Counted from the stretch's first letter, positions 42,521 through 64,000 are shown. The stretch is DNA of 64,000 nucleotides from Schmidtea polychroa (GCA_044892525.1 CM097886.1:99448001-99512000); one strand, 5' to 3'. Notes: generated from the sequence alone by a model not told the origin. Program-made: numbers and translations.

Positions 42521-45500
42521 AAGGTTTAAGACTGCTGGAGGTGGTTGTCATAATACCAATAAATTGTCTGGATTTGGTGAAAATCTAAGTTAATAATTTA
42601 TTGATTATTTAGAAGATTCTTAACTTGGCACTCCTCACTGATGATAACCTTAACTGGACTGGATCTGAGATATCAATAACCCCAATTTTAATGACTTAAA
42701 TGATAATAATGTCCCGATTAATACGCAACAGAATTTTAGGAAATGCAAAAAGTGGTTGGCCCGAGAATCTTTCCGTTTTCTCTCCGCGATTGACCAGTAT
42801 CATTGGGGACCTTAAATGGGCCCTTAGAATTGTCCGTGTCAATCTTAACTATGGATAATGACCCTAATAACGACGACACTACTAGTGATAATCACGCTCC
42901 TAATAATCTCAATGCTAATAATAACACTAGGAGTACTAATGGCAACAATGATTATCATACTGAAATCAAGGGCAATAATTATAATAATTATGCGAAGGAT
43001 AAAAATTTAAGAAAAATTCTAATATTAATCCTTCTGATGATAATACAAATGATAGAACTTGTGATCGTTATAATGGCGGAACTTATTGTTGGGCTAGAAC
43101 TGATTTCTAGACCCAAAATACTAATTGTGACTGAAGCGCGTAGGTACACAGCAAGAAAAAAAGCACCAAGTATAGTTAAATATTAAAACCTACACCAAAT
43201 AAACAATATTAACTAAAGGAGAAAGCAACAAAAACATAAACAAAGAAATTAAACAAAATTATACAAAAGCAAGAAGTGATGCAAAAATCTAACTCAAAAA
43301 TAACCAAATAAACACAGGGTTACAAAAAACAGACTCGAATAACTTAAAAGACGATAAAAACAGTAAAACATTCCAGAAAAACCCAGAACATTCTATAAAA
43401 ATGGCGATGACCATCACAAAAGTTATCTAGAACAACAAAAGTTAAGGAAAATAAATAAATTAGTATTAAAAGTAAAAAATCTCAAAAAGAATTCATAAAA
43501 ACATCAGTTAAAATAAAAATTAAATTAAAAGTAAAATAGAATGTTCTGGAACCGTTCCAAATCCATCATGGACGTAAAATTAATGAAAAATAATTAAAAA
43601 ATAAAAATATAAAAATAAAAACAAAAATTATGGCACAAAAATTGCCATTAAAAATAGCAAAATCGTAAAATAGAAAATTCTGGAATAAAAAGAATTCGAG
43701 TTTGTTTTAATGCATCAATACATACACGTGTACTAAATAGGTATATATACCGACACGTTTCAGTCACAATAATCACTTTTATGCCAAATTTTTGTGACGA
43801 AATTTCCAAAATCGATAGTAAGCATTGATCTTTATTTGTATATTAATTGTTTAATTATATAGATGGTATTTTAAATTTATTTTTTTTTTTTTTGCTTAAA
43901 ATTTTTTGCGATGTATGAGTGATCAACGGCGTACTGGTATTCCTGCGTCGTTGTTCAGTCCTGCATCCAATTTATTAAAATCGTTATTAACAGGACATGC
44001 AGACACGCATTATCATTATTATAGTGATATTTATTATATGATTCCTTTTTGTTCGGGTCAGCCGGAGGTCGAACTACTTCATGGTCCTGCCATGGAGTTA
44101 GGTCGAGGAAACCCTCCGCCTGACTCTTCGTATTTATTTAAGGTCAGCCGTAAATGGTTGACTTAGCACACAACACTAAGGTTTGTGGACGTGGTCACAG
44201 TGGGGCCATGGAAGCAATATTCTTCCCGACTCATTGCGTAATATACAATTAAACTCAACACTTAAAATCCTGAACAATAACTCTACACTAAGGTTCTAAT
44301 TTGAGTAGAGCTCGTACCTAAAATTACACAATTCTACACTCACATTAATGTAGCTAGTTGATTCATAATGGTAATTTCAATTATACTTAGACATATGCCG
44401 AACTAGATTTTGTAGTAAGGATCTTTGATAAAGTAATAGAAATAAGAGAGATATTCGGCATACGTACAGGTATAACTTGATCTAGATATGCTGATTCCGA
44501 GTAAAGATAGACATTTTAAATCTAGTTCCCACTTTAAAATGTTTGTAAATGTGTAGGCTCTTAGTTATAATATTCTTGTTGTTAACTATAAAACTATAAG
44601 TTATAAATAATTACGATAGCTAGGTACAAATCACGTCGATCCTGAAAATGTAAATTGTTAATGGAGAAAGTCTGATCAGAGATAGTAGTAAACAATTTTT
44701 CGTATAAAATCAACTTAGGATTGGTTACAGATAGGCGATAGACGCGCTAGAACCCTGAAGTTTAATCCACAAATAGGACCAGGAAATCTGTAAGTACTGC
44801 GGAAAACAATGTTGATCATAGAAAGGAAGTTGTAAGAAGTATATTCCGTCGACTAAAAATTTCAAATTATAAAGTACGAAAATACGAATTACAAAAGTAT
44901 AAATTTTAGATTATAAACTTATAAATTATAAGTTAAGCAATTATAACTTATAAAATATGAATGTATAAATTTCAAAATATGAAATTATAATTATAAATTA
45001 CAAGATGGTAAATCCCTAAATTGAAAAATTTTAAATTATAAATCGAAAATTATCAAAGTATAAATTATAAAACATAAATTTATAATTCTAAAACATGGGA
45101 TTATAAAATTGTAGTTATCATAATCCTGATCATTTCTCTTGTTATTACTATTAGCAGTATCAACATTATCATTACTATTAGTATTATTATACTTATTCTT
45201 ATTATTATTATATTATTATTATCATTATTATGAATATCATAATTAGTATTATTATTATTATCATCATTATCAGTACCATTATAAAAATTTATTATTATTC
45301 TTGTTATTATTATTATTAGTATTATTATTATTACCATTATTAAAATTTATTATTATTCTAATTAGTATTACTATCATTGCTATTATTAATATTATTATTA
45401 TCATTATTATTATTATTATTAGTATCGTTATTTCATTGTTATTATTATTGGTATTATTACAGTTAACTACAAAAAAATCGATATCCCAATCCGATAACGA

Positions 45501-45982
45501 TCACCTGGAAATTTAGAAATTAGCAAATTAAATAAATTACTTGTATGCAGAGCAAACCACTCATAACGAGCACAACCGAAGGAAAGGCAAGCAGACGAGA
45601 AGCTAAGCTCGTTGTTAATACCTGTCGCCTCAGCGTACCCGAATTTAGTGGCAAAAGATTTAAACCCTGAAATTTTAAATTCGTGATAATATTTACATTA
45701 AAATACAAAAAATATAATTTAAATGTTCACTTAGTGATAAATACAAATTTAGAGAAAAATAGTTAATTAAAACAAGAGGATGGTTGATAAATTTTTTTTT
45801 GGGTTATTAGTAGACAAAATATGAAATTTCATTCTATGGTTCCTAGGATTATAAATGTTGGTCTTAAAATAAAATATTTCTTTTCATTTTCAAATTCTTA
45901 AAGGGAAAAAGGGTCAACAAAATCCTGTGTTTAACGTCGTATTACAATCAGTATAAAGTGGCTTGATTGTTCTTTTGTAGAA

Positions 45983-46348
45983 ATGTCCTATTCTGACAGT
46001 GATAGTAACGAAGCAGCCGACCGGCAGATGCTTACACGACTCCGGACACGGTACATATGGTACCGTATCCATGATTGGAACCGGGGCTTGGACCTCGACA
46101 ACTGGGGCCCAGTAATCAGGAGTGGGCCGGAACCGGACGCCCCAGCGTGGGTAAAAACAGAGCCCACAAACGATTTTTTGCAAGAGGCCCGCGACCGAGC
46201 GGCCATCGAGGTAGAAGCAGCTCAGATGCGACTCAAGAAGATCGAGCTACAAATCCAAGCAGAAAAAGAGGGAAAAACCGTGGAGGACCTAGAAGAGGCC
46301 GAGGCAACCCCGCGGAAGAGGGGAAGGCCTCGCAAGCGATTGAACTGA
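45983..46348 (+). CDS. LTR-encoded 121-aa AT-hook protein (copy B)
   Basis: PRKRGRPRK and VKTE motifs; ortholog of 25645-26010 with many synonymous differences. Confidence 0.75.
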   Translation: MSYSDSDSNEAADRQMLTRLRTRYIWYRIHDWNRGLDLDNWGPVIRSGPEPDAPAWVKTEPTNDFLQEARDRAAIEVEAAQMRLKKIELQIQAEKEGKTVEDLEEAEATPRKRGRPRKRLN

Positions 46349-46558
46349 CTCATCGTCAAAATTTTGTTTTTGCAAATTATCATTCAGTTGTGACTTTATT
46401 AAACTTTGATTTTAGTGATAATTATTTCAGTCCTTTTAATAAATCATCTTGTGTATTGCGTACTTGACATCCGAAACTATGTTTATTTATAATATTGATT
46501 TTATTTTATAATTGAATGAATAGCATGCTGCAAGAATATAATCGTTGAATTTATCTAG

Positions 46559-47028
46559 TGTTCAAACTATTGGAAAATCTGCGAAGAGATAGGGCAGAAG
46601 CTCAAAAACAGTCCGAGGAGCTCCGCATACGCGTAGACAAGCTCAAGGGACGGTGCCGGGAACTAGAAAGCACCTGGTTTAGTCCCGAGGATATGAAAAA
46701 GAAGGTGGCGCAGGTCCTTCAACTGCAGACGCAAGCCGCGCAGGATCAGATGGAGATCCGGGCACTGAAGCTCCAGCTCCGCGTGCTAGAAACCGAGCGA
46801 AATGAACAAGTAGTTCACGGAGCCGCCATAAGCCAAATCCGGCCGTTGACCGTGGAACTAGCAGCAATATACCCCCCGGCCGCGAAAGAGAAACCCAAAA
46901 GAAAGCGGTTAGGCCGAAATATTCGGGAAAAATTGAAGAAAGCTAGACTGGCCGAACACGAGCGACAAGCAAATTTGTCACTGGCAGCTGCGACGGAATT
47001 GACCAGTCCTACCAATAAGCCTGTTTGA
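46559..47028 (+). CDS. LTR-encoded coiled-coil/basic protein (copy B); no in-frame ATG near its start, likely spliced
   Basis: Homolog of 26368-26837 with a TAG|TG acceptor at 46557-58. Confidence 0.7.
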
Positions 47029-47433
47029 ACTTATATTCGGTTTTAGGTGTTTTGTAGTATTTTTATGTATTGTGGTAGTCTTCAAATAATATGTTCCTTG
47101 TTAAAATACTGCACGTTTTGTAGTGATAAAATAAGGACTAGTACAGTTTATGATTGCCTGGGAAATGAGAGTTGTGCATAAGGTTGGGAAAACAATTTTG
47201 ATAAAGGGACCTGAGAAATCGGACACACACCTTCTATCGGTAGTCCGTGAACCCACGGAGTACTCGACAACTATAGTGCTTTGATGCGCTCACTTTTTGC
47301 GAGTACTCAACCCTTGGTACAGTACCAACGTTGATCACTCAACGGGTACCAAGCGGAAAAACAATGTTGTATTTTGGGTTACGCTGGTAACAGCACTCAA
47401 TCATTCAACCACCAGTAACCCACCATACAAATT

Positions 47434-47451
47434 TGGGGGCTCAGCCGGGAT
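47434..47451 (+). promoter_or_regulatory. Primer-binding site, tRNA-Pro type
   Basis: TGGGGGCTCAGCCGGGAT is 16/18 identical to the canonical Pro PBS TGGGGGCTCGTCCGGGAT and lies 8 nt after the LTR end. Confidence 0.85.
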
Positions 47452-48151
47452 TATTGAAAATTTAATTGGTGAAAGAACCCGAGAATAGATATAATAGAGA
47501 GAGTAAAAGCGGATATAAAGTGATATGCATTCAAGACCGAGCAGGTTGTTTTCCCAAGCGCTTAAACTTAGTATATGGATATGCGAATATGATAAAATGT
47601 ATGTAGAATGTCTAAATGAGTGATGGAAGTTTTAAAGTATGACGACATATGAATGTATTGAAAGTGGGTATGAGAATGCTGTACGAATAACTTAGTAATA
47701 GAATGAATGAGGATAAACGAAAATTAAAACGAAAACAAATTATAATAAAATTGTAAATAACAACGATTAATAAAATGTAAATATAAGGAAATAATAAAAA
47801 TTTAAAAATAGGGAAAAGGGGGGATAGCACGCTAATAAAGATAGAACAAATGAACAATGAAATTAAACTTAATCAGAAAACGTGTAAAATATGGCGATAA
47901 GGAATGGGATATGAGTTATATATAATTAAAACGATTGTAATAAAATCACAAGATCATGAAAGAAATGTGCGCGGAATAGAGCATTAAACAGAGGGAGACG
48001 GGGTTGTTAAGGGTAATAAGTAGAATGTAAAGGTTTATCGAAGCACTAATAAAATAAAGTATTCTGGATATTAGGGGGAAAAACGATAAAGGGGGAAAAA
48101 TGACGCGGAATATTAATAAAAAGAGAACTTTAATTAATAAATCTTAATTAG

Positions 48152-48634
48152 ATGGAATCAACCGGCTACATTACAAAGAGACTCGAAAAATTCGTAGATT
48201 TAACACACAATTCGTTACAACGGCTAAATCGCAAAGCGGACCAGTTGATAAAAATCCAAGATGAGATGAGCTTGAATCCAAGGCCGCAAGCTGAGGAAAT
48301 ATGCGTAATGATGAAAATAGCGACACCTAATGCAGAATTGACCACTAAAAGAGTTTATCAACTTCAAAATTTACGATTAGACAATGCCAAATTTAACATC
48401 AAATGGCAGGAGATAATGATAAAAATGGAAACGATCGAGGAAGAAATTAAAGAAGCAATCGAACATCAAGTTAAAGATTTTAGAAAATGCTTCATATGCA
48501 GAACCAATGAAATACGAGTAATGACGATTCCATGTGGTCATTTATGCTACTGCGAGAATTGCGCAGAGAAAATTAAACGATGCAACGTATGCGATACGAA
48601 TGTTAGAGAGAAAATTGTAATATACCTCCCATAA
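48152..48634 (+). CDS. 160-aa coiled-coil protein with a C-terminal C3HC4 RING of IAP type (no BIR domain visible)
   Basis: CFICRTNEIRVMTIPCGHLCYCENCAEKIKRCNVC..VREKIVIYLP-stop has RING-HC spacing and an IAP-like hydrophobic tail. Confidence 0.85.
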   Translation: MESTGYITKRLEKFVDLTHNSLQRLNRKADQLIKIQDEMSLNPRPQAEEICVMMKIATPNAELTTKRVYQLQNLRLDNAKFNIKWQEIMIKMETIEEEIKEAIEHQVKDFRKCFICRTNEIRVMTIPCGHLCYCENCAEKIKRCNVCDTNVREKIVIYLP

Positions 48635-50041
48635 GGAGATGTTGTCAAATAAATTTCTTGTGAATGAATATGAAGTGATAAAATTAGTAAATTATATTAA
48701 AAATCCATTATAGCAACCGAAAGGTGTAAAACATACGATGAACATAGACATATAAAGGACACAAAATACGTTAAATAAATAGACAAGCAACACAGCAATT
48801 AGAACTAAAATCAAAGTTGAATGCAGGACTGATCATAGTCGTATGAATGAGCTGATCGCTAAGATCAGTACGATTTTTATTTCCAATTTTCTTTTCTTCC
48901 TGTTTGTTATTTTGGCATAAAGAGATACGATAATGAGGGGATGACAAGTGAATAGTCCTTACGACACTTGCCCGGATGGGGAAATCCTGATCACCCTGAT
49001 GAGAGAATGTAGTAGGATCCATCGCAAATGTTGGGGAGTTTCTGTCCAGTGACTGATCACCACTTGTGGGAAACGAACCAACGCGATTATTATATTTTTT
49101 GTCTGGGAGACTGGGACTAACTAAAAGGGCGAATAAAAATAGAAAAATAAAATAAAAATTGAAAAACGCGCGCTAAACGTTAAAAATTTAATCCGAGAGC
49201 AGCTGCGGATTTGAAGAAACCGTTTTTGGACTTCAAATCAGATGAGAATAATGATTTTTCCCTAGCGAGTGATGAGGCACCCGAGTACAGCGGCTAACCA
49301 CCGGACTGTAGTGTCCAGGAGATTATCGGCCAAGGGACTGATGATGCTGGATCACCCAATACAAAAACCCGGATGCCACACCGAGTATTGGGCGCACTTT
49401 TTTGAGTTGCTAGCGGGACTTGATACAAAAACCCGGAAGGGTAGCGAGCGAGAGAGACCCAGTTACCTACACCGAGTATCAAGGAGCCCAGTGAAACGGT
49501 TGTGAGATGCGAGTCAACCGGTAAAGGACTCGTACTCAACAGGCAACCAAGATTGGACCAGTTGTGAGGCGGGAGACCGAGAGTCAACTGCATACCCAAT
49601 TTCCTTTTAGCTTCACTAGTCGGGAGATCTGGTTCATCACTTTTGAGAATCACGATCAAGGCGATTAGGCATTTCCGTGTTTTTTAAATCCTGATAGATA
49701 GGATGTTTTTTCTTCGTGATTATTGCTAGCAGGGGTCGGTACAAAACCCGGATGCCCACACCGAGTACCGATAGGCCCAGTGAAACGGCGATGAGATTAG
49801 AGTTACCGGTATTAGACTCTTTTCAATAAGCGGCCAAGAATTGAGCCAGTTGTGAGGCCTCAGCAGATTAAGAGTTGGAGTAGGAGGAGCCTCGAATTTT
49901 TGATTAGCCCGAAAGTCAACTGTCAACTCAATTTAATCGCGGTAGGGACGATAGTAGGTGTTAAAACCGAAGGCGTCTGGGGGTTGAAGAAACCTCATTT
50001 AGGGCATTTGAAACCGGTCAGGGACCGAAGACCGCGAATAC

Positions 50042-50483
50042 GGCGTAATGGTGTAAAAGCCCAGGCGTCTAGGAGTCGTAAAAGACTTCAATTTTGATTA
50101 AACCGGCCGGAAGCCGATGCCGACGCGGAGGTCTAACAAACCAAAGCGTTGATGGATAATAGTAGAGTATATGGCGTAATGGTGTAAAAGCCCAGGCGTC
50201 TAGGAGTCGTAAAAGACTTCAATTTTGATTAAACCGGCCGGAAGCCGATGCCGACGCGGAGGTCTAACAAACCAAAGCGTTGATGGGTAATAGTAGAGTA
50301 TATGGCGTAATGGTGTAAAAGCCCAGGCGTCTAGGAGTCGTAAAAGACTTCAATTTTGATTAAACCGGCCGGAAGCCGATGCCGACGCGGAGGTCTAACA
50401 AACCAAAGCGTTGATGGGTAATAGTAGATTATATGGCGTAATGGTGTAAAAGCCCAGGCGTCTAGGAGTCGTAAAAGACTTCA
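50042..50483 (+). repeat. 131-bp tandem repeat, ~3.4 near-identical copies, in the element's leader
   Basis: Units start at 50042, 50173, 50304 and 50435. Confidence 0.95.
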
Positions 50484-51554
50484 TGAGATTAAAATGAGTT
50501 GATTAAACCGGCCAAGGAGCCGATGGTAATTGAGTGAAATGATTTAAATGAAAATAAAGGAGTTGAACAAACCGGCCAGAGAGCCGATGGTAAATAAAGG
50601 TGGATGTAGAGGTCGCGCGAACCAAAGCATCAATGATTAACTATGAAATTGATTAAACTGAAATAGATTAAGTGCGATAAATATGTAATGAGTAGAGGAG
50701 AATTATGATAAAGCGCCGGCGCAAGCGAAAATTAAACCAGTTTTTGGATGGGGAAAAGCGAACGAATAGATAGTAGTTGAATTATTGAATTTTATTTTGA
50801 TATTTATGTGATTAATATTATATTTCTATGATAATTATAAAAGGGATAGATAATTGATACGACTATATAGATAATTGATACGAGTTATAGATAATTTAAA
50901 ATCAACTTAAAATCAAAATGGGGCGAATAGCGAGAAGTGTAGAAAAGCTAGAAAATTTGAAGCGAAGGGACAGTAAAATAAAGGGAAAAGGAAAGTAAAT
51001 GAAGGGTTTAATAAAGAGAATTTATGATATGTACTAGAGGTGTTAATTATTTTAGAATAAAGCAAACAATTCAGAAAGAAATCAAAGAAATCAAGAAAGC
51101 AATAGAAATCAAGAGATATAGAGAAATCAATTAGAAGCGAAGAATCAAGGAAATTAATAAAACCAAATCCAAGAAGAGTTAGAGAATCGTAAAGATTAAA
51201 GCGAGAAAAATACTTAGAAAACATCGAGCTCGATTGACAAAGTAGAAAATTTATCAAAGGATATTAAAAGGAGGAAAAATTGATAGCATAGCTAACCGAA
51301 CGAGACGAAAAAGTAAAGGAAACCTCAGTTTATTGGAAAAGGAAGAGATACAAAAGGCCAAGACCAACAGAAAACTACACAGGAAGCCAGCATCAGTAGA
51401 AACAGTATTTGAATCAGACAGTTTAACAAACGAATTTGAGAACAGCGACGATCTTAAACGAACCGAACTAGATCCGATAAGTGACATTGAATCATCAGAC
51501 GAGGAAGGAAATAGTTCAGAGTCAACCAATATAACAATTTTGTGTCAAGAAATA

Positions 51555-52538
51555 ATGACAGACGGAATTCCAAATGTAACAGGGCTAACGGACCCACCGG
51601 AAACAAGTAATGTGCACGTCAACATTGGAGAATTCAGAGAGAAATTTCGAGGAGAGCCATTCGATGGAAATATAAACCAGCTGGAAACGTTTATAAAGGA
51701 ATTCGAAGTATACATTACGATATGTCACTGGCCAGACATAGTCGTACGAGAACGAATACCCCTATATCTAAAGGGAAGCGCCCAAGATGTATACTTGGAG
51801 GCGAAATGTGATGCAACTAAGTTGAGAACGTGGAAAGAGATCAAGGAATTTTTAATAAAAACATTCGGTACCGAAAAAGAGGGAAATCGGAAAATGTTAG
51901 ACTTTCTGCATCGAAAGCAGAAATATAACGAATCCAACGCACTGTACGCATGCGAATTGAGACGACTAGCACGAGAAGCCTTCGATTCAAATCAACCAGT
52001 TCCGGAAGACAAAATAATAGCCGTATTCGTAGATGGCATGAAACGGGAGGATATACGAGCAACTTTGGGATGCCGAGCACCAGAGACGCTGGAAGAAGCA
52101 CTAAAAATAGCTAACAAATGTGAAACTTACCTAACACCAATACAAGTAGCAGCAATGACAGCAGCCCCAGCAGCTCCAGCAACAACAGCAACAACCACAA
52201 ACAACCAAGTCAATAATGCAAATCCAGTAATGAATCAATTCATCCCAGGATCGCAACAGTTGTTCAAAACTCCACAAACAAGAAACCAAAACAATGGAGG
52301 TAATATTCAAAATTTTACTAATAATTTCAGGAACAACGACATCAACAATCGAACGTGCAACATATGCCAACGACCAGGGCATTGGAGCAATGAATGTTAT
52401 AAAGCAAGGATGTGTCAAAAGTGTGGGAGAAGAGGCCACACGGAAAATGTCTGCAGAGGACCCATGATGTCTATGAGCAGAGGAGGAACCAGAACCTGCT
52501 ACAATTGTAATCAGCCTGGACACATGGCAAGAGAATGC
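51555..52538 (+). other. Polyprotein domain: Gag capsid-like region with three CCHC zinc knuckles (52356-52538)
   Basis: FRGEPFDG..WPD..LYLKGSAQDVY..WKEIKEFL; CNICQRPGHWSNEC, CQKCGRRGHTENVC and CYNCNQPGHMAREC. Confidence 0.9.
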
Positions 52539-55500: not shown

Positions 55501-58500
55501 AAGCGATTGAAGAATATAGACGGGTATACGTATGGTACCCTGAACAATTTGGTGAAATCATCCGGAAATGGAAACAACAAGAGTGGGCCGAAAACTCACC
55601 TGAGAAATATCAATTAAAAATATTCATGCCAGATTTTGAACCAATGGAAAAGGAATTCTATACGACAGCTAAAGTCAGAGAAGTTAAAAAGAGAATACCT
55701 TATGAACTCCCATTCCACTTACAACACGAGGGACGATCATTAGACGACGATATTGAGATCGGTGTGACACCACTCCAAGGAGAAATTGTGAACAGATTAA
55801 CGGTGAGTAAAATTGCAGGTAGAGAGCTAAGGAGAAGAGAGATAAAGCAAAAATCATCCACCCAACAACCAGGAAGTTTGGACACACCAGAAGTTCCAAA
55901 TGCGGTTAGTGAAGTGACGATCGAAACAACGGGAGAAGACGAAATACTGAATGAATTACAAGAGATAGTAGAAGCAGGCGAGATTATGAGAGCATCGCAA
56001 TCAGGAGATCTATTTATCGACGAAGGTGAACCGACAACTGATGATTTAGATGGATTTGTATGCGCGCAGAGACAACCAGTGGAAACGACGGAAGCCGAGA
56101 CGGATTTAGATAACGTGGAAAGAGGTGCCAATAAAGATGTAACCACAACCGATGAATGGAGCAACTGGAGAGTAGATCCAGGAGCGACCACGTCAAAAGA
56201 TACAACTTACAATCCGCCAAAACGGAAAGAAACCGGAACAGCTATGGATCGACGAACAAGAGGAAGACCAAAAACAGATAAAGCAGAGATCGAACCAAAA
56301 TCCAAAGTTCAGGCGCAAATGGAGCAGGTAAAAACTAAAATGGATAAACTAAGTGCATTAGTAAAACAAGTGAAAGTGAAGACAAGCGTCCGAGAACAAG
56401 GGACACGATGGATAAATGACCTATTAGCCAACGTGTTAGCATTAGCAAATCCAGAAGTGAAAAGAGTCATGAGGAAGGATAATATTCCGACCGAAGCCAA
56501 ACAATTATGGGCAGTATTGAAACCGATAATAATGAAAATCATGGATAATAAAATTCGATTAACGTTAAAAGATCCCGTGGAACTCAGATTAATTGTGGAA
56601 CATCTATTAAGCAGATCAGAGGACCAAAATCGATTTTTAGTGGGATTAGCATATTTAGTATATAACGTTATCGGTCAATATAAAAAACGAATGCCAAAAT
56701 ATAACGCAACGGGTTACGAATTCACAGTAACAGAAATAATTAAACGATCAATAGAACCATATATACTTGAACAAGGGGGATGGAGAAGCTTCATCGAATC
56801 AACTGGGAAGAAAGATCAAACGGAAATGATGCAAGCAAAGTTACGCGATTTGCTAACTGAATTCGAAGGAACAATCAATATAAACGACCCAAGAGCAAGT
56901 CGAAAGGGAATGAATGCCATAATAACCACGATATTGATATGGATGATGTGTATCAAAGGAACGGAGTCATTTGCAGTATACGACTGCGACAACATAAAAA
57001 TCCATGAGAAATATTCATTAAAGGATACGGAAGACTGTAAAGCGGCAAACCCAAGAAAATTACAAACAGTCATGGCATCAGTCTCGTACAACGTATATCA
57101 AGAAGCAGATTTCATCAAAACTATGGTCCAAGAGTGTACGGTAACCAGAAAGATATTCGCACATCACTGCGGTTCATCCTCACACTCAACAATCATAGAA
57201 CCAGGATTGGAATCGACAGTAATATTACTATCAAGAGAGGAATGCGAGGAAGGGTTCCGATCAGGGAGAATCCACTTAAGGCAAGGGATTGAAATCGCCG
57301 CAGAACCAGGAAAAATAAAAACGACTCGCGTATATACGGCGGGCAGAATCACTAAAGGAGACGGAACATGTGAGACAGGAACATACACCTTGAACGGACA
57401 ACTGGTTAGTGGAGTGGTCGTAATAGAAAGTTACGAAGCTAAATTGGAAAAGTATCAAGGCTACTTTGACCCTGACACGCAAGCAATGAAGAAATACCCA
57501 AGCTGTCTCGCATCAGATCGATCATGTTCAACCGGAATGTCAACTCTGGTATACCACGCAGATCAGAAAGTATGTCGACTAATGTTACTCAAGACAGCAG
57601 TATTCGAAGAAATCCAAGGGAAAGTGTACAGTGAACCAAAAGGAGAAGCAGAGAGACGAGCGATGGAAGAATTGAGAGCAAGGAAAGGATTCAGGGAAGA
57701 CGTAATAACATCGAAATTGGAATCGGAAGTAACACCCACAGCGATAATCTCCAAAGACGATGGAATAGGAATGAGGTTCATAAAGAACAAAATGGTGAGT
57801 AAATGCGATGAGATGGTGATCAGCACCAATTATAAAGGGATCTACTTGTCGCGGAGAACCCTAGCAAATGCAGTCGGAAGACTAAGCGAAAAGGATGTCA
57901 AATTATATTTATACGCTAATAATAAGATGGATTTCTTATATCACAGAGGATTAACATCTACGGAAAAAGTCTACCATGATCTGTTAAGAAACGATTGCCT
58001 GCTCAACAAAGAAATATTGAGAACAAAATTAGCAATGGCGATTACAAATCCAGATAACGCAATTCCACTACTACCATTACAGGAAGGATATTTCGGACGA
58101 ATCGTGGGCAAAGTGATGTACACCTACCAATGCAAAAAGATAATGGCAAGATTGCCGGAAAACCCTACAATACCAAGGGATAAGTGTGCAAACGAACTCG
58201 AAATTATTCACGAAGGTAAACCCAGGTTTGTGCAAGCAGTCACTAGGATAATGAACCCGGTAGGGTTTCAGCCAAATCTGTTCAATTGCAGTAATGCATA
58301 TGGACCAATGTATGAAAAAGAAGATGGACAATGGGTTCAATTTCCAAGTAAAACAATCGTAGTGACACCCAAGAAATTTGGATTGACGGAACTAACAACA
58401 GAATTAGAGTTCAAGCCGATAGACGTATCACAGAGTGGATTATATACACCAAAAGATCTTGAATCAGCAAGGGCCCACATGTTATTCCCAGCACACAGAC

Positions 58501-61500
58501 AAGCGATCCTATCAAATATAGTGACTATTTCTGGAGGAAATAATTATGGGGAGAGCCCAAATTACGAGCTATTATTATCACCAAGTCACTATCAACAAGC
58601 AACAGCAAACATGATGAAGGCTATGTGGGGTCGATTTTTGGTATTTGGCCAAATGATGGCAGGAATACTCGGAATTATTCTGATAATACAAATAGTCAGA
58701 GTAATACTAACCCAGATGCTAGCATGTTTTGACATCTATAAGCGCGAGAGAAAAGTAAATTGGAAACTTGCAATTGGATTCTTACCGTTCTTAGCGAAAA
58801 CAATGGTGTTGCATGGACACTCAAAGGATATTCATCGAATAAAAAGATTGTTGAAAATACTAACGCAAATGAAAGGGACAGACGAAGAAGTCGGACGTAA
58901 GTTCAAAGTGATAATGAGATTAGAAGCAGAAAGAACTCAAGAGAAAGCAAAAAGAACCGGGAAGTGGAAAAAGTGGATGAACCTCAGACGAGACGATGAT
59001 AGTGACAACGACAATGATGATTTCAACGACGATGATAATAACCAAGGAGGAGCAATGTTGATAAATAAAAATACAGCCACTTGGGAAAACGAAAAAATGA
59101 AACCATGGGGATCACCGTATTCACAGACCCCATATTTACAAGCACCAACTAATGGACCAATGCGACGACCAGGAACAATGAGAGAACGGATAAGAATGGG
59201 AACCGGAAGATTACCCATACCGAACATTTATCCAACAGCTTATGAACCAAATTGGGCAGCAATGGATCCAACGATGATCAAACAGGCTAAAAGTGTAGAA
59301 CAAGAAGTGGAGACACGAACGATTGCGGTATTGCAGACACCAGCCGGACCATCATTAACCATCACGGTCGAAGTAAACGGAATAGAAATGGATGCAATGA
59401 TCGATACCGGAGCAAATATTTCGGCAATAAATATGAATATGCTACCAGGCAGACTATGGCCATGCATTGAAGAGACAACCATGGATGTAATAACATGCAG
59501 CAAACAATCCATAGCGGTGGTAGGAAGAGTATGGTCAACGATTGAATATAAAGGGGTTAAAGTTACAACGTACCTCGCAGTCATTAGACAGCTAAGCGTA
59601 TCATGTATAATTGGAACAGATGTAATGCCGGAATTATTGAAAGAAATTGTGATTGATTTGAGTTCCATGAAATTAAAAGATAAAACTGGACAGATATGCA
59701 CAATGAGAACAGAAGTGAGATGCTCCGAAAAAATGATAATACCAGCACGTACCCAGACAATATGTTATGTCAAGGTCGATAACGAAGCCAAAGGAGATAT
59801 GATATTTGAACCAAGTCAAAAATTCGAGAAGAGAAGGGAGCTGCCATTGGCAAGAGAAATTGTCAGTATAAATGAGGATAACGAGATACCCATCAATATC
59901 ACCAATTTTGATGAGGAAGATAAAGTAATCTACGAAAACGAGAGACTTGGAAAACTCACACCAATGATGAACATTGAGCTACCGGAGATAAAAAGCGAGG
60001 GAGCAGACGAAAAAGAATTATGGACCATCGATAGCGAACTCCTAAATAAAGACGAAAAGGAACAACTCAGACAACTACTGATTGAGTTTAAAGATATTTT
60101 TGCGGCTTCAGATTTGGAATTGGGTACTAGCGATGTAACTCAACACATTATACCATTAACAGATGAGACACCCATAACGTTAAGACCATATCGATTGGCT
60201 GAAGCACAAAAAACGGTAGCAGAGGAAGAAGTACAAAAGATGTTAGATGCTGGGGTAATAGAACCTAGTTGCTCACCATGGCAATTCCCAGTGGTAATGG
60301 TCAAAAAGAAAGATGGCACACAGAGATTTTGTATTGACTATCGGAGGTTGAACGCAGTAACAAAAAGAGATACATATCCACTGCCAGACATAAACGAAAT
60401 GTTACAGATGTTGCATGGAGCAGCATACTTTACATCTTTAGATCTAAAGAGTGGATACTGGCAAATTAAAGTTAAAGAGGAAGATAGAGAAAAGACAGCC
60501 TTTACCATCGGAAAAGATTTATATCAGTTTAAAAAGATGCCATTTGGATTAACAAACGCACCTGCTTCGTTTCAGAGATGTATGAACTTTGTGACACACG
60601 GGATCAAACAATGTATGGTGTATATCGATGATCTGTTAATTTATTCAGGTACTTTCGAGCAACACTTAATCGACATCAGAAACGTATTCATAAGACTGAA
60701 ACAATGGAAGCTGAAATTGAAACCGTCAAAATGCGACTGGGCAAAGGAGAGAGTCACATTTTTAGGACACATTGTGTCGGCAAAAGGAAAAGAACCAGAT
60801 CCGAGAAACATTGAGAAAATAAAGAATTGTCCGATACCAAAAACCGTGACTCAGGTACAAGAATTTCTGGGATTATGCGGATACTACCGCAAGTTTATCA
60901 AAAATTATGCAACTATCGCAAAACCAATTCAAGAACTAACAAAAAAAGATACTCCATTTCTGTGGGAAAGGGAACAGCAAATAGCTTTCGAATCGCTAAG
61001 AGATAAACTAATAGCCTCGCCTATCTTAATCCACCCAGATTTCAAAAAGCCTTTTTTATTAGCAACTGATGCAAGTGGATACGCATCAGGAGCTGTGCTA
61101 GGACAATGGGATGAGGAGAAAAGAGAAAGAGTCATCGGATATTATAGCAAGACGTTCAAAAAACACGAGAAGAATTACTCGGTCACAGAAAGAGAGGCCT
61201 TAGCAATAATTCAGGCGATAAAACATTTCAAATATTTATTGTGGGGACACGAGATAATTATTACTACGGACCATCAACCTCTAGTTTGGTTGGGCCAACA
61301 TAAAGAGGCATCTAGTCGATTGATGAGATGGGCAATGCAGTTACAAGAATATTCTCCATACATCAAATTCAAGTCAGGAAAAGCAAACGCAAATGCAGAC
61401 TGCATGTCGAGATTTGTATTTGAAGAACTCATGGATCATGACGTCAGACGAATATGCCTGATAATCGCGGAAGATATCGATTTTACCAATCTAAAGAACG

Positions 61501-64000
61501 AACAAAAGGAAGACAATGAATTAAAACTAATAATTGAGTTCCTGGAAAAAAACGATATGAAAATATTCAACAACGATGATCGACTAAAAGAACACATGGA
61601 GAAAAATCGTCACAGATATACGATCGAGAAAGGATGGCTATTGGTAATGGATGGCGACAAACGATTGATGTGTCTACCAGAAAGTAGACGGAAAGAAATT
61701 ATGATTCAATACCACGATGGTAAATTGGGCGGACATATGTCAGCCAAGAAAACAGAAGCAAGGCTCAAACAGAAATATTACTGGCCAAATATGAGCGATG
61801 ACGTGAAAGAATGGATAAAGAACTGCCTGATATGCGCAACCAGAAAAACAACGGGCAGTAAACTAAAGCCACCATTGAAACCAATGCCGATACCGCCAGA
61901 ACCGATGACAATGATTGCAATGGATGTAGTTGGACCACTACCAGAGACTAACAGTGGAAATGTGTATATATTGGTAATAACTGATTATCTGACTAAGTTC
62001 CCTGAAGCATTTGCGATGCCAGACCAGAAAGCACGAACGGTTGCAAGGATATTAGTGGAAGAGATCTGCTGCAGATATGGAACACCAAAACAAATCTTAA
62101 CTGACCAAGGAACTAATTTCATGAGCGAGATAATAAATGAAGTGACAAATTATTTTAGAATTGCCAAATTGAGAACCTCACCATACCACCCGCAAACGAA
62201 TGGTCAGACAGAAAGATTTAACGGCATACTAATAGACATGATGTCCAATTACGTGAGTAAACATCAAAAGGACTGGGATGAATATATTAAGTTGTGTCTA
62301 ATGGCTTATCGAATGTCAATACACTCAGCAACGAAAATGAGTCCGTTTAAACTCATGTATGGAAGGGAATGCAACATGCCGATGGATCTCGAATACCAAC
62401 CGCCAATCTCACAATATATGGAGATAGATGATTATGTGACAAAGTTCAAGGAGAGAATGCAAGAAATATGGAAAACCGCAGGGATGAACATCCGATTCAA
62501 CCAAGAGAGTTATAAGGAATTACATGATAAAAAGAAGAACGTGCAAAACCATCAATTTAAAATCGGAGATTGGGTTATTATAGAAACACCCGAATTAATC
62601 CCAGGAACAGCAAAGAAATTACAACGTAATGGCAGAGGGCCATATGAAATCATCTATGTAAACGAGAACAACGCTAGAGTGAAGTTGGTTAACAATCCAC
62701 TAATTAGACCTATTTATGTGAATACATGTCGATGCAAAGCAGTAGCGAAAACTGCCACTAAAGACCCAGAAACAAGAAGGATAATCACGAGATCACAAAC
62801 AAATGCCACAACGGAACCAGAAGTAAGCGGTAGATTAACTAGATCACAGACAAGACGGATATTCATGTTGAGAGGAGAAACAAGCAGCAGCGCCCATAAA
62901 GGAACTGAAGCAGAAAGCGAAGCGGACGCAATGGCAAGGAGCCAAGCAACATGGAATATGACAGTAAAAATAGCACGAGAAATTGTACCAGAATGGGCCG
63001 ATATAACCAATAAATACCAAGTGTTGGGCAAACTAATGTTAGTAGCAGAAAGATATGCGAAAGGACGAAGATATGCCGAAGGATTACAAATACCGACTCA
63101 AATATATGAACTAATCCGGAGATTACCAATCATGTTCCTAACAAGTGATTTGAGTAATAACTGGCCAATCCATCATGCAGTGAAAGCAGGACAAGAAAAA
63201 CGAGCTTTAGAGATTATACGAATAATGGAAAACTGCAAACAATCAACAAACGTCAAAAACAGTAAAGGAAAAACTCCACTGATGAAAGCCATAGCAATAG
63301 GCGCGTCAAGAGATGTACTCAGAGAATTATTAAGAACGGGATCCACGCTGAAAGAAAAAGACAACAAACAACGAACCGTATTACGTTATGCCGTCAGGTC
63401 AAAAAGACCTAGTATAGTGAACTTTATCACAGGAAATGCAACAACCGAAGAAGCCGAGGTATTGGGACAGAGCATTGAACCAATTCTGGAAGCCATCAGA
63501 GGAAACTTAGACAGAACCGCAGCAATATTAATCAAATGGAAACAAAACGAATTAAGAGCGGAAGTAATTGATATAAATCAATTCCAAAACAACGAAAATA
63601 TCGTACTAAGAAGCGCCATATACTCAAGACCACCAATGCCAAAAACCATTAAAGCAATATTACAGAGAAATAGAACAGAATTGACAGGTAATTGGTGGAA
63701 ATGCACAAAAACACATGCGATGAAAAAGCAACTAGAAATACTAGTGTGGGAATGGCACCGGAAACAACGGAAATATCAAGGAACCAAAGAAGAACGAGAA
63801 AGTATCCACAACGACAAAAAAGAGATAATTAAAAAATACGAGGAGATGATCAAAGCAGCAAATGTCGAGGACGACATTTTCAGGAAAACCCCGGGTGAGA
63901 GGAATGACGACGACGACGACGACGAAAGGATGGGGGATAACGATAACAACCCAGAGGAAAACGACAGAGAACAGAATCCGGAAGGCGGAGAAACAACGAG
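51555..64000 (+). CDS. Gag-cargo-Env-Pol polyprotein, at least 4148 aa, 3'-incomplete (frame open from 51246; first ATG 51555)
   Basis: Line-by-line hand translation found no stop from 51246 to 64000. Confidence 0.93.
   Translation, partial: [4148 protein letters not shown]
53625..53840 (+). other. Polyprotein domain: ubiquitin-like domain 1
   Basis: [46 protein letters not shown]..ILTL follows the ubiquitin beta-grasp pattern. Confidence 0.55.
54150..54419 (+). other. Polyprotein domain: ubiquitin-like domain 2, ending in Gly-Gly
   Basis: [61 protein letters not shown]..SGG aligns with ubiquitin MQIFVK..EVEPSDTIENVK..LIFAGKQLEDGRTL..LRGG. Confidence 0.7.
54792..55229 (+). other. Polyprotein domain: TRAF-type MATH domain
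   Basis: [69 protein letters not shown]..IRVEV closely follows the TRAF2/3/5 TRAF-C sequence. Confidence 0.92.
55608..55805 (+). other. Polyprotein domain: ubiquitin-like domain 3
   Basis: [46 protein letters not shown]..LTV. Confidence 0.6.
56400..56798 (+). other. Polyprotein domain: Bcl-2-like helical domain
   Basis: BH2-like [16 protein letters not shown] (compare Bcl-xL LEPWIQENGGWDTFVE) and a degenerate BH1-like [11 protein letters not shown]. Confidence 0.6.
56910..58730 (+). other. Polyprotein domain: chuvirus-like envelope glycoprotein (signal 56910-56969, ectodomain, TM ~58623-58730)
   Basis: The Cys/motif pattern YDC..[65 protein letters not shown].LGI matches my recollection of the chuviral G family. 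Confidence 0.8.
59330..59660 (+). other. Polyprotein domain: retroviral-type aspartic protease
   Basis: [10 protein letters not shown] (DTG at 59403-59411) and CIIGTD. Confidence 0.92.
60140..61412 (+). other. Polyprotein domains: reverse transcriptase and RNase H
   Basis: RPYR, [32 protein letters not shown], YIDD (60621-60632), FLGH; RNase H TDAS, E(REALA), TDH and ADCMSR. Confidence 0.97.
61713..62720 (+). other. Polyprotein domain: integrase (HHCC, D-D35-E, GPY)
   Basis: H..GH..CLIC; D at 61923, D at 62103 and E at 62211 (35-residue spacing); GPY at 62637-62645. Confidence 0.97.
63162..63660 (+). other. Polyprotein domain: ankyrin repeats (3-5) C-terminal to integrase
   Basis: [26 protein letters not shown] and [14 protein letters not shown], plus further degenerate repeats. 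Confidence 0.8.

What the first reader, a model, noticed from the sequence alone, without database searches (positions are those of the whole stretch)
43087..64000. Giant enveloped Ty3/gypsy element with a single >4100-aa Gag-cargo-Env-Pol-ankyrin polyprotein
The frame is open for at least 12.7 kb with no stop or frameshift, so Gag, envelope and Pol would be made 1:1:1 from one ORF. The element is >20.9 kb in the window and should exceed 25 kb with its 3' LTR. Typical Ty3/gypsy elements are far smaller, and errantiviruses and retroviruses put env after pol. An intact ORF this long implies a young, possibly infectious element. Planarian Burro elements (Grohme et al. 2018) are, as I recall, giant gypsy elements with very long ORFs and apoptosis-related accessory domains. 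This element may be a Burro relative, so the novelty may lie in the specific domain set and order rather than in size.
Basis: partly seen in the sequence, partly recalled or inferred. Interest (0 to 1): 0.95.

Follow-up and report, generated by a model that had tools for sequence, protein, structure and literature searches.

The report
Known giant planarian Burro retroelement
The region is a real and seemingly intact copy of a giant virus-like jumping gene of flatworms that makes its coat, envelope and replication proteins as one huge protein, but this unusual layout was already described for the planarian 'Burro' elements in 2007-2019, so it is a correct reading rather than a discovery.

Summary
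On the + strand one frame is open from 51246 to the window end: 4251 codons with 0 stops, against 110-404 stops in each of the other five frames. The first ATG is at 51555. In order it encodes Gag (capsid plus three CCHC knuckles), a MATH/TRAF domain, a mononegavirus-type fusion glycoprotein with a signal-like segment and a transmembrane segment, then protease, RT, RNase H, integrase and ankyrin repeats. I could also define the 5' LTR (43087-47425, 4339 bp, TG..CA), a tRNA-complementary primer-binding site (47434-47452) and a solo LTR of the same family (20518-27234) flanked by a 4-bp target duplication. The host is a flatworm. [quoted passage not shown] A 2026 survey reports the gag-env-pol order in flatworms, nematodes and bryozoans. 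BCL2-like, dUTPase-like and BIR motifs could not be confirmed with my tools. Minor extras are two constrained ORFs inside the LTR and a RING-finger ORF in the leader.

The parts
43087..47425 (+). 5' LTR of the full-length element (4339 bp, begins TG, ends CA; left flank TTAT at 43083-43086)
   Evidence: It is collinear with the solo LTR at 20518-27234 from first base to last. Both copies share the same termini, TGTTGGG...CCCACCA. GC content and A-skew jump at about 46.0 kb inside it.
45983..46348 (+). LTR-internal ORF A (121 aa, basic AT-hook-like C-terminus)
   Evidence: It is open in both LTR copies with a homologous stop position (solo-LTR 25477-26010). Amino-acid identity is 0.69 at nucleotide identity 0.69, and a rough dN/dS is 0.14. 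It has no Pfam hit.
46558..47028 (+). LTR-internal ORF B (156 aa, coiled-coil-like, basic C-terminus)
   Evidence: It is open in both LTR copies with a homologous stop position (solo-LTR 26277-26837). Amino-acid identity is 0.72 at nucleotide identity 0.74, and a rough dN/dS is 0.11. The other two frames carry 4-10 stops each. It has no Pfam hit.
47434..47452 (+). Primer-binding-site candidate (19 nt, starts TGG, 8 nt after the LTR end)
   Evidence: Its reverse complement ends in CCA and divides exactly as the end of a T-loop, a 5-nt T-stem, a 7-nt acceptor strand, a discriminator base and CCA. It is unique in the window; 0.01 matches are expected by chance at up to 3 mismatches. The cognate tRNA was not identified, and there is no tRNA gene in the window.
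48152..48634 (+). Leader accessory ORF with C-terminal RING finger (160 aa)
   Evidence: Pfam zf-C3HC4_3, E 3.4e-12, residues 111-152. It lies between the PBS and Gag. The exact protein is not in the protein collection.
50038..50483 (+). Tandem repeat in the leader (131 bp x 3.4 copies, 99% matches)
   Evidence: Tandem Repeats Finder and self-BLAST. Tandem repeats are drawn in the published Burro maps (Fig. 2A legend).
51246..64000 (+). ORF1 polyprotein, open frame with no stop (first ATG 51555); the C-terminal part lies beyond the window
51657..52541 (+). Gag: capsid-like domain (residues 138-296) and three CCHC zinc knuckles (368-432)
   Evidence: Pfam Retrotrans_gag E 2e-6, Ty3_capsid E 5e-6, zf-CCHC E 3e-13. 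Three C-x2-C-x4-H-x4-C motifs are visible in the translation.
54150..54395 (+). Ubiquitin-like candidate (residues 969-1050)
   Evidence: The support is weak: OTU1_UBXL E 2e-4, with UBX and UCH_UBL1 at E about 0.1-0.2. Relatives carry ubiquitin/Rad60-SLD matches in the Gag-Env spacer (P0086 E 4e-5 and 1.5e-3; P0009 E 5e-3).
54792..55226 (+). MATH/TRAF-C domain (residues 1183-1327)
   Evidence: Pfam MATH_2 E 1e-28, TRAF-mep_MATH E 4e-26.
56313..56909 (+). All-helical region just upstream of Env (residues 1690-1888), where the literature places a BCL2-like motif
   Evidence: The model has eight predicted helices but low confidence (pLDDT 40). There is no Pfam or PDB sequence hit. One distant relative aligns here (P0009, 27% identity). 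The BCL2 likeness is not confirmed here.
56910..58925 (+). Env: signal-like hydrophobic start (residues 1889-1907), ectodomain, transmembrane segment (2470-2488; 58653-58709), short basic tail
   Evidence: Pfam PF24664 Monjiviricetes_fusion E 7e-67, covering profile positions 1-579 of 653. The only 19-residue window with Kyte-Doolittle score above 1.6 in the whole ORF is 2470-2488; the region has 16 Cys. Fourteen cysteines are invariant across three env sequences at 35-39% identity. A TM-like hydrophobic peak near the env end is in all seven relatives, and a signal-like peak at the env start in five of them.
59361..59636 (+). Aspartic protease (residues 2706-2797, DTG at 2720)
   Evidence: Pfam gag-asp_proteas/RVP, E 1e-4 to 6e-4, below the gathering score here but strong in relatives. 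The DTG motif is present.
60300..61352 (+). Reverse transcriptase (3019-3177, YIDD at 3126) and RNase H (3240-3369)
   Evidence: Pfam RVT_1 E 6e-35, RT_RNaseH E 2e-38. The best solved structures are Ty3 Gag-Pol 7q5b (E 1e-113) and Ty3 RT 4ol8 (E 6e-89).
61677..62192 (+). Integrase (H2C2 zinc domain 3478-3535, catalytic core 3551-3649)
   Evidence: Pfam Integrase_H2C2 E 4e-21, rve E 3e-12. The HHCC pattern is present. The alignment to Ty3 Gag-Pol extends through IN.
63168..63431 (+). Ankyrin repeats downstream of integrase (residues 3975-4062)
   Evidence: Pfam Ank_2 E 1e-7 for the whole ORF and 7e-9 for the segment. Relatives also carry Ank, after Pol as a separate ORF in L001 or between Env and PR in P0086.
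20518..27234 (+). Solo LTR of the same family (6717 bp as assembled, including two N runs), flanked by the 4-bp direct repeat CATG (20514-20517 and 27235-27238)
   Evidence: It is 80-89% identical and collinear with 43087-47425 only. The ORF1 protein has no match anywhere in 1-51245. The termini are identical and the same 4 bp flank both sides.

Best explanation
Window 43087-64000 is the 5' three-quarters of a full-length, apparently undamaged copy of a Burro-type giant Ty3/gypsy (Metaviridae) LTR retroelement, an endogenous retrovirus-like element in a flatworm genome, most likely a dugesiid planarian such as Schmidtea. Shown here: a 4.3-kb LTR, a tRNA-type primer-binding site, a 4.1-kb leader with a RING-finger ORF and a tandem repeat, and one uninterrupted ORF. 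That ORF encodes Gag, host-like accessory domains (ubiquitin-like candidate, MATH/TRAF), a mononegavirus-type fusion glycoprotein, PR-RT-RNase H-IN and ankyrin repeats. A solo LTR with a 4-bp target duplication 16 kb upstream shows that the family integrates by the usual integrase route and is later lost by LTR-LTR recombination. Inferred mechanism: the LTR drives a genomic RNA that is translated into the giant polyprotein. The hydrophobic segment at the start of Env acts as an internal signal sequence and the single strong hydrophobic segment at its end as a stop-transfer anchor. Gag and the accessory domains would then stay cytosolic, the Env ectodomain would enter the ER lumen, and Pol would return to the cytosolic side. 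Signal peptidase and the element's own protease would then release the parts. The accessory domains (MATH/TRAF, ubiquitin-like, RING, ankyrin, and BCL2/BIR according to the literature) plausibly interfere with host ubiquitination and cell-death pathways. All of this matches the published description of Burro1/GYPSM1, so the element is an instance of a known family.
For: Open frame and chance. Domain order. The Ty3/gypsy assignment rests on the PR-RT-RH-IN order, and on Ty3 Gag-Pol (7q5b, E 1e-113) being far better than any retroviral RT (E about 1e-31). LTR termini, solo LTR with CATG duplication, and PBS. Env: PF24664 E 7e-67, signal-like and TM segments, and 14 invariant cysteines across relatives at 35-39% identity. 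The fused arrangement is a lineage trait and not an accident of this copy. About 16 long metagenome proteins combine the same env family with PR-RT-RH-IN at 49-53% identity in RT-IN. P0004 and P0086 add CCHC Gag upstream, and P0086 adds ubiquitin/Rad60-SLD and Ank. Flatworm host: a proteasome beta-1 exon at 11993-12577(-) has its best named hits only in Platyhelminthes (51-59%), and the background is about 30% GC against the published >70% A/T for S. mediterranea. Published match: the 4,873-aa ORF1, three CCHC in S. mediterranea (two in Dugesia tigrina), MATH inside ORF1 (absent from the D. tigrina ORF1), env in frame between gag and pol, ankyrin, accessory ORFs and tandem repeats (PMC6431247). 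BURRO1 is described as abundant, active and expressed (PMC8532177).
Against: I could not align the window to the Burro1-4/GYPSM1 reference sequences (Repbase is not available to the tools, and Grohme 2018 is not held). Family identity therefore rests on architecture and not on nucleotide identity, and the host species is not proven. Three published Burro motifs were not recovered. There is no Bcl-2 or dUTPase Pfam or PDB hit. The single-sequence AlphaFold models were too poor to search with (pLDDT 40 and 44). No BIR domain is present in the in-window ORF; it may lie in the roughly 600-700 residues beyond the window. The membrane-threading and processing model is an inference from hydropathy alone. 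The Gag ATG lies about 4.1 kb downstream of the PBS, behind the RING ORF, and behind the two LTR ORFs as well if transcription starts upstream of them, so simple cap-dependent translation of the unspliced RNA is not obviously efficient.
Confidence: 0.88

Rival explanations
1. It is the same element, but the proteins are not made 1:1:1 from one polyprotein. The genomic RNA is spliced, removing the long leader and possibly env or the accessory block, so that Gag, Env and Pol levels are set by subgenomic mRNAs as in retroviruses. The continuous frame would then simply reflect the lack of need for a frameshift site.
For: There are 4.1 kb of leader between the PBS and the first ATG of ORF1. It holds one conserved-looking ORF (RING), and two more ORFs lie in the LTR. 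In relatives gag can be a separate ORF, and Ank can sit in different places (L001, P0086), so the expression architecture is plastic.
Against: There is no transcript evidence either way, and I ran no splice-site prediction. An uninterrupted 12.7-kb frame, kept in several relatives as Gag-Env-Pol or Env-Pol fusions, is most simply explained by translation as a fusion.
Confidence: 0.3
2. It is a Burro-like element of a different planarian species, or an undescribed Burro subfamily. That would make it a new member of a known kind and not one of Burro1-4.
For: Species identity is not proven (one search shows only 'flatworm'). The solo LTR in the same window is only 80-89% identical, so at least two diverged subfamilies are present. 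BIR, BCL2 and dUTPase motifs were not recovered.
Against: The features that separate the published S. mediterranea and D. tigrina elements both match S. mediterranea: three CCHC rather than two, and MATH inside ORF1 rather than upstream. At least 4148 in-window residues are compatible with a 4,873-aa ORF1.
Confidence: 0.15
3. It is an artefact: a chimeric assembly, or a chance nested insertion of a mononegavirus-derived glycoprotein gene (a non-retroviral EVE) into an ordinary gypsy element.
For: The genome is repeat-rich and hard to assemble. N gaps and an inverted duplication occur in the neighbouring solo LTR.
Against: There are no N runs in 43087-64000. Env is in frame on both sides with zero stops over 4251 codons. 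The same env-between-gag-and-pol order occurs in independent relatives from other samples and in the literature.
Confidence: 0.02

Closest known systems
[quoted passage not shown] 2018; Arkhipova & Yushenova 2019, PMC6431247)
   Same: Giant size. One enormous ORF1 that starts with Gag carrying three CCHC knuckles. MATH_TRAF_C inside ORF1. Env related to mononegavirus fusion glycoproteins, in frame between gag and pol. PR-RT-RH-IN, then ankyrin repeats. Accessory ORFs and tandem repeats outside ORF1. An AT-rich flatworm host.
   Different: Nothing demonstrably different. The following were not confirmed here: BCL2-like, Ubi2/SUMO-like between MATH and Env, dUTPase-like, BIR, and nucleotide identity to the reference sequences. 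The LTR-internal conserved ORFs and the RING ORF are not mentioned in the texts I could read, and may or may not be among the 'accessory ORFs' drawn in the published figure.
Burro-like element of Dugesia (Girardia) tigrina (PMC6431247)
   Same: A giant single ORF1 (5,140 aa) with Gag, Env and Pol in frame.
   Different: The D. tigrina element has two CCHC knuckles, lacks MATH in ORF1 (it is in an upstream ORF) and has a midasin-like region. The window element has three CCHC knuckles and MATH inside ORF1.
GAG-ENV-POL 'errantiviruses' of Platyhelminthes, Nematoda and Bryozoa (PMC13524379; Sacco et al. 2022 as cited there)
   Same: A Ty3/gypsy backbone with an env captured from an RNA-virus-type glycoprotein, placed between gag and pol.
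   Different: Those elements were screened with LTRs at most 14 kb apart and with separate ORFs. The window element is much larger, fuses all three into one frame and carries many accessory domains. That paper classes the flatworm env as HSV/gB-type (class III); I could not test the fold class here.
Uncharacterised metagenome-derived polyproteins P0001-P0007, P0085, P0086, P0091, P0096-P0098, P0101, P0103
   Same: The same env Pfam family fused to PR-RT-RH-IN in one protein. Identity is 49-53% in RT-IN and 36-41% in env. Some have CCHC Gag, a ubiquitin-like domain and Ank.
   Different: They are shorter (2.6-4.1 k aa). MATH was not seen in those I scanned. Ank sits in a different position (P0086), and gag is a separate ORF in L001. 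Their host organisms are unknown.
Drosophila gypsy-type errantiviruses and vertebrate retroviruses
   Same: LTRs, PBS, Gag, PR-RT-RH-IN and an envelope gene.
   Different: There env follows pol, is expressed from a spliced mRNA, and is an F-type or class I protein. Those elements are 7-10 kb.
Mosquito BEL/Pao and arthropod gypsy elements with Chuviridae-like glycoproteins (Dezordi et al. 2020, PMC7642597; PMC13524379)
   Same: An LTR retroelement that captured a glycoprotein from a negative-strand RNA virus lineage.
   Different: A different backbone (BEL/Pao) or host phylum, and env as a separate ORF.

Membership tests
Ty3/gypsy (Metaviridae) LTR retroelements | Pol domain order PR-RT-RNase H-IN, with RT/IN closest to Ty3-type enzymes | tested here: met
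   The Pfam order is PR 2706-2797, RT 3019-3177, RH 3240-3369, IN 3478-3649. The best solved structure is Ty3 Gag-Pol 7q5b at E 1e-113, against about 1e-31 for retroviral RTs.
Ty3/gypsy (Metaviridae) LTR retroelements | LTRs with TG..CA termini, a PBS next to the 5' LTR, and a short target-site duplication | tested here: met
   The 5' LTR is 43087-47425 with TG..CA termini. The PBS candidate is 47434-47452. A solo LTR of the family is flanked by CATG/CATG. The 3' LTR, the PPT and the TSD of this copy are outside the window.
Ty3/gypsy (Metaviridae) LTR retroelements | Gag with a capsid domain and CCHC nucleocapsid knuckles | tested here: met
   Retrotrans_gag, Ty3_capsid and three zf-CCHC.
Burro (GYPSM1) giant elements of dugesiid planarians | Host is a dugesiid planarian | tested here: inconclusive
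   The host proteasome beta-1 exon has its best named hits in Platyhelminthes only, at 51-59%, so the host is a flatworm lineage without a proteome in the database. The AT-rich background fits. Species and family are not proven.
Burro (GYPSM1) giant elements of dugesiid planarians | Giant size (internal region up to 25 kb, more than 30 kb with LTRs) | tested here: met
   At least 20.9 kb lie in the window with only one 4.3-kb LTR and an ORF that is still open. This is a lower bound only.
Burro (GYPSM1) giant elements of dugesiid planarians | A single ORF1 of about 4.9 k aa starting with Gag and three CCHC knuckles | tested here: met
   At least 4148 aa from the first ATG with no stop, and three CCHC. 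The full length is not visible.
Burro (GYPSM1) giant elements of dugesiid planarians | MATH_TRAF_C domain within ORF1 | tested here: met
   MATH_2 E 1e-28 at residues 1183-1327.
Burro (GYPSM1) giant elements of dugesiid planarians | Env with similarity to mononegavirus fusion glycoproteins, in frame between gag and pol | tested here: met
   PF24664 E 7e-67 at about 1889-2499, between MATH and PR and in the same frame.
Burro (GYPSM1) giant elements of dugesiid planarians | Ankyrin repeats | tested here: met
   Ank_2 at 3975-4062.
Burro (GYPSM1) giant elements of dugesiid planarians | Ubi2/SUMO-like domain between MATH and BCL2 | tested here: inconclusive
   There is no Pfam hit in 1330-1889. 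A weak UBXL-like match lies upstream of MATH (E 2e-4). The relative P0086 has ubiquitin/Rad60-SLD in the Gag-Env spacer.
Burro (GYPSM1) giant elements of dugesiid planarians | BCL2-like motif upstream of Env | tested here: inconclusive
   The region 1690-1888 is predicted to be all-helical, but the model is poor (pLDDT 40). There is no Pfam or PDB sequence hit. The published call came from more sensitive HHpred or annotation pipelines.
Burro (GYPSM1) giant elements of dugesiid planarians | dUTPase-like domain between PR and RT | tested here: inconclusive
   The 220-aa spacer has no Pfam hit. Its PDB hits only reach the N-terminal part of RT. The model is beta-rich but has low confidence (pLDDT 44).
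Burro (GYPSM1) giant elements of dugesiid planarians | BIR domain | tested here: not met
   No BIR match is present in the 4251 in-window codons at E<=0.01. Roughly 600-700 residues of ORF1 are expected beyond the window, so absence from the element is not shown. This is one accessory motif among many, and it varies between members.
Burro (GYPSM1) giant elements of dugesiid planarians | Nucleotide identity to the Burro1-4/GYPSM1 reference sequences | not testable with these tools
Grohme 2018 and the primer tables are not held.
GAG-ENV-POL errantivirus-like elements (PMC13524379) | ORF order gag-env-pol on a Ty3/gypsy backbone | tested here: met
GAG-ENV-POL errantivirus-like elements (PMC13524379) | HSV/gB-type (class III) envelope fold | not tested
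Sequence and profile searches of env against PDB gave no significant hit. Only Pfam family membership (PF24664) is established.

The most novel reading that the evidence does not exclude
The copy may carry features not yet described for Burro. The first would be two protein-coding genes embedded in the 4.3-kb LTR and kept under purifying selection across diverged subfamilies, plus an IAP-type RING ORF in the leader. The second would be production of the giant Gag-Env-Pol protein by flavivirus-like co-translational membrane threading, with an internal signal sequence and a stop-transfer anchor. That would be a way of making an enveloped retroelement with no described parallel among retroviruses.
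Probability: 0.15. Interest if true: 0.45.

Novelty: already known. Interest (0 to 1): 0.2.

Why it matters
Burro elements are of real biological interest. They are the largest known LTR retroelements, they make up a sizeable part of planarian genomes, and they hamper assembly. They are expressed in differentiated tissues when PIWI control is lost. They are also the textbook exception to the rule that env follows pol. That interest already belongs to the published work. This window adds a clean worked example: exact 5' LTR bounds, a PBS, a solo LTR with its 4-bp duplication, an intact 12.7-kb frame, and evidence that the Gag-Env-Pol fusion is shared by about 16 uncharacterised environmental relatives. 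It also gives two small leads, the constrained ORFs inside the LTR and the conserved signal/anchor topology of Env.

Tried and rejected
(1) The bacterial-style ORF lister misses the ORF because it runs off the window, so I used a script instead.

(2) Exact look-ups of four window proteins (RING ORF, hAT ORF, LTR ORFs A and B) found nothing in the protein collection.

(3) Grohme et al. 2018 could not be read by PMC id or DOI. No supplements are held for the BURRO1 primer table or the PBS table, so a direct sequence tie to BURRO1 and naming of the primer tRNA were not possible.

(4) A deep search with the MATH-Env spacer found only 3 relatives, so no alignment could support structure prediction. 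The two single-sequence AlphaFold models (BCL2-like candidate; PR-RT spacer) were low confidence, and I did not run fold searches on them because the matches would be meaningless. In hindsight one of those jobs would have been better spent on the env ectodomain with the three-sequence alignment.

(5) Env against solved structures gave no significant hit, either as a single sequence or as a 3-sequence profile.

(6) The top bit scores in the RT-IN search belong to concatenated gene models of the pseudoscorpion Cordylochernes. These are ordinary gypsy Pols without env, not relatives of the architecture.

(7) The PBS motif is not found in the two relatives' loci.

(8) I rejected three readings: a nested EVE insertion, an assembly chimera and a domesticated host gene (see rivals).

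Slip declared: in my private reasoning I recalled from memory a short BH2-type motif of BCL-2 proteins, a generic tRNA T-loop string and example PBS strings. The PBS argument rests only on the standard lengths of tRNA stems and the CCA end.
Full report
OBSERVATION. The ORF lister does not report frames that run off the window, so I scanned the frames directly. On the + strand a single frame is open from 51246 to 64000 (4251 codons), and it is the only open stretch of at least 300 codons on that strand. The other five frames of the same 12.75 kb contain 110-404 stops each. With the local base composition (A 0.41, T 0.20) the chance of 4251 stop-free codons is about 10^-131. The first ATG is at 51555, so at least 4148 residues of the protein lie in the window. 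The region 43087-64000 contains no N runs.

WHAT THE ORF ENCODES. Pfam gives the following, in order and all in one frame:
- Retrotrans_gag/Ty3_capsid at 138-296.
- Three CCHC knuckles at 368-432.
- A weak ubiquitin-like (UBXL) match at 969-1001.
- MATH/TRAF at 1183-1327 (E 1e-28).
- The viral fusion glycoprotein family PF24664 'Monjiviricetes_fusion' at about 1889-2499 (E 7e-67).
- Aspartic protease at 2706-2797, with DTG.
- RVT_1 at 3019-3177, with YIDD.
- RT_RNaseH at 3240-3369.
- Integrase H2C2 plus core at 3478-3649.
- Ank_2 at 3975-4062.

The RT-RH-IN stretch is closest to yeast Ty3 Gag-Pol among solved structures (7q5b, E 1e-113; Ty3 RT 4ol8, E 6e-89). Retroviral RTs score about 1e-31. 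The backbone is therefore Ty3/gypsy.

The Env segment begins with a hydrophobic, signal-like stretch (1889-1907). It ends with the only strongly hydrophobic 19-residue window of the whole ORF (2470-2488, Kyte-Doolittle 2.53), and it holds 16 cysteines.

ELEMENT BOUNDARIES. Self-comparison shows a second copy of the 5' end at 20518-27234. It lies in the same orientation and is collinear with 43087-47425 only, at 80-89% identity. No part of window 1-51245 matches the polyprotein. Both copies start TGTTGGG... and end ...CCCACCA, and the upstream copy is flanked on both sides by CATG. That copy is therefore a solo LTR with a 4-bp target-site duplication. As assembled, it includes two N runs and an inverted duplication.

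Eight bases after the LTR lies a 19-nt sequence starting with TGG. Its reverse complement ends in CCA and divides exactly into the end of a T-loop, a 5-nt T-stem, a 7-nt acceptor strand, a discriminator base and CCA. It is unique in the window, and I take it as the primer-binding site. The tRNA could not be named: there is no tRNA gene in the window and no PBS table is held.

Between the PBS and Gag lie 4.1 kb of leader. It contains a 160-aa ORF with a C3HC4 RING finger (48152-48634, E 3e-12) and a 131-bp x 3.4 tandem repeat (50038-50483).

HOST AND NEIGHBOURHOOD. The window also holds:
- A proteasome beta-1 exon at 11993-12577(-).
- A PHAF1 exon at 28512-29237(-).
- An intact hAT-like transposase ORF at 38864-40828(-).
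- An ISXO2/IS1595-like DDE fragment at 35726-36442.

The proteasome exon has its best named matches only in flatworms (Paragonimus, Calicophoron, Fasciola, Opisthorchis; 54-59%), and Macrostomum scores 51%. The host is therefore a flatworm from a lineage with no annotated proteome in the database. The roughly 30% GC background agrees with the >70% A/T reported for Schmidtea mediterranea. The species itself is not proven.

RELATIVES. With the env region as query and a length filter for giant proteins, seven metagenome-derived proteins of 2855-4029 aa carry PF24664 plus PR, RT, RH and IN in one chain, at 36-41% identity in env. With RT-IN as query, about 16 such proteins appear at 49-53% identity. 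The higher bit scores in that list are concatenated gene models of a pseudoscorpion and lack env.

P0004 has CCHC Gag, Env and Pol in one 3700-aa protein. P0086 (4057 aa) reads CCHC, ubiquitin/Rad60-SLD, Env, Ank, PR, RT, RH, IN. In L001, gag is a separate ORF and an Ank protein follows Pol. So the env-before-pol fusion is a trait of a whole lineage, and the accessory domains move about within it.

A TM-like hydrophobic peak near the Env end recurs in all seven relatives, and a signal-like peak at the Env start in five of them. Fourteen cysteines are invariant in a three-way env alignment at 35-39% identity. This suggests a conserved, folded, disulfide-bonded ectodomain.

COMPARISON WITH WHAT IS KNOWN. 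Arkhipova & Yushenova 2019 (PMC6431247) summarise Jurka 2007 and Grohme 2018 and add their own annotation. Burro elements of S. mediterranea have internal regions up to 25 kb and exceed 30 kb in total. Burro1 (= GYPSM1) has a 4,873-aa ORF1 with a typical Gag followed by three CCHC knuckles. [quoted passage not shown] These are followed by PR, a dUTPase-like motif, RT, RH, IN and ankyrin repeats, plus BIR and accessory ORFs. [quoted passage not shown]

The D. tigrina relative has two CCHC knuckles and lacks MATH in ORF1. The window element has three CCHC knuckles and MATH in ORF1, so it matches the S. mediterranea form on both points.

A 2026 survey (PMC13524379) reports GAG-ENV-POL Ty3/gypsy elements in Platyhelminthes, Nematoda and Bryozoa. 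BURRO1 is treated in the literature as an abundant, active, tissue-specifically expressed element under PIWI control (PMC8532177).

WHAT I COULD NOT CONFIRM. Pfam and PDB sequence searches did not detect the BCL2-like, SUMO-like (at the published position) or dUTPase-like motifs. The spacer has too few relatives for an alignment, and the single-sequence AlphaFold models were unusable (pLDDT 40 and 44). No BIR is present in the in-window ORF; some 600-700 residues are expected beyond the window if ORF1 is Burro1-sized. The env fold class was not tested. Nucleotide identity to the Burro references could not be measured with the tools at hand.

MECHANISM (shown versus inferred). Shown: the LTR, PBS, Gag, Env, PR, RT, RH and IN are all present and undamaged in the window, and the family integrates with a 4-bp duplication and leaves solo LTRs. 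Inferred: the genomic RNA is translated into one polyprotein. The internal signal-like segment and the stop-transfer anchor place the Env ectodomain in the ER lumen, while Gag with the accessory domains and Pol stay cytosolic. Signal peptidase and the element's protease release the parts. The accessory MATH/TRAF, ubiquitin-like, RING and ankyrin modules act on host ubiquitination and cell-death pathways, as the published authors also propose. The main rival on mechanism is regulated splicing.

SIDE FINDINGS. Two ORFs inside the LTR (45983-46348 and 46558-47028) are open, with homologous stop positions, in both the full-length element's LTR and the diverged solo LTR. They show about 70% amino-acid identity at 69-74% nucleotide identity, and a rough dN/dS of 0.11-0.14; dS is saturated and the alignment was protein-guided. 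The alternative frames are full of stops. They sit just downstream of the point where GC content and A-skew jump (about 46.0 kb). They look like LTR-borne accessory genes. I do not know whether they are among the accessory ORFs drawn in the published maps.

VERDICT. Interest is low (0.2). The residual novelty lies in the small leads above.

SLIP DECLARED.

Noticed in passing
window 45983-46348 and 46558-47028 (and 25477-26010, 26277-26837 in the solo LTR): Two ORFs inside the 4.3-kb LTR are kept open, with homologous stop positions, in both diverged LTR copies. They show about 70% amino-acid identity at 69-74% nucleotide identity and a rough dN/dS of 0.11-0.14. They have no Pfam match, and ORF A ends in an AT-hook-like basic run. 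They may be LTR-borne accessory genes.
   Followed up: partly
window 48152-48634: A 160-aa ORF in the leader between the PBS and Gag carries a C-terminal C3HC4 RING finger (zf-C3HC4_3, E 3e-12). It has no BIR domain, and its relation to the BIR/IAP motifs reported for Burro is unknown.
   Followed up: partly
window 20518-27234: A solo LTR of the same family is flanked by a CATG target duplication. As assembled it is 2.4 kb longer than the 5' LTR and contains two N runs (22709-22873, 23971-24098) bracketing an inverted duplication (22916-23256 / 23630-23970, 99.7%). This is probably an assembly problem or an internal rearrangement.
   Followed up: partly
window 38864-40828 (-): An intact 654-codon open frame has weak hAT-transposase signatures (Spin-doc zinc finger, DUF4371, hAT dimerisation domain). 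It is probably a hAT-family DNA transposon or a domesticated copy, and it lies 2.3 kb upstream of the Burro LTR.
   Followed up: no
window 11993-12577 (-) and 28512-29237 (-): Two host-gene exons are present: proteasome subunit beta type-1 (Pfam E 4e-30; best named homologues are trematodes at 54-59%) and PHAF1 (E 5e-37). The solo LTR lies between them.
   Followed up: partly
window 35726-36442 (+): A 238-aa ORF has a weak ISXO2/IS1595-like DDE transposase match (E 1e-5, just below the Pfam cut-off). It is probably another transposon fragment.
   Followed up: no
window 345-1078, 45142-45459 and 44894-45085: There are AT-rich satellite or microsatellite arrays. A short-period tandem array lies at the window start. 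Inside the LTR's U3-like part there are an (ATT)n run of about 98 copies and a 7/15-bp array.
   Followed up: no
L001 (ENA ERZ25039515 contig_45040), 17034-24564: The metagenome contig carrying the relative P0006 (Gag / Env-Pol / Ank ORFs) continues into bacterial-type genes (luciferase-like monooxygenase, NAD-binding dehydrogenase, MnhB). This is most likely a chimeric metagenome assembly.
   Followed up: no
P0003 and P0085 (metagenome relatives): Some relatives show two or three separate aspartic-protease matches, for example a second one after integrase in P0003 and one directly after Env in P0085. This suggests duplicated protease modules in this lineage.
   Followed up: no
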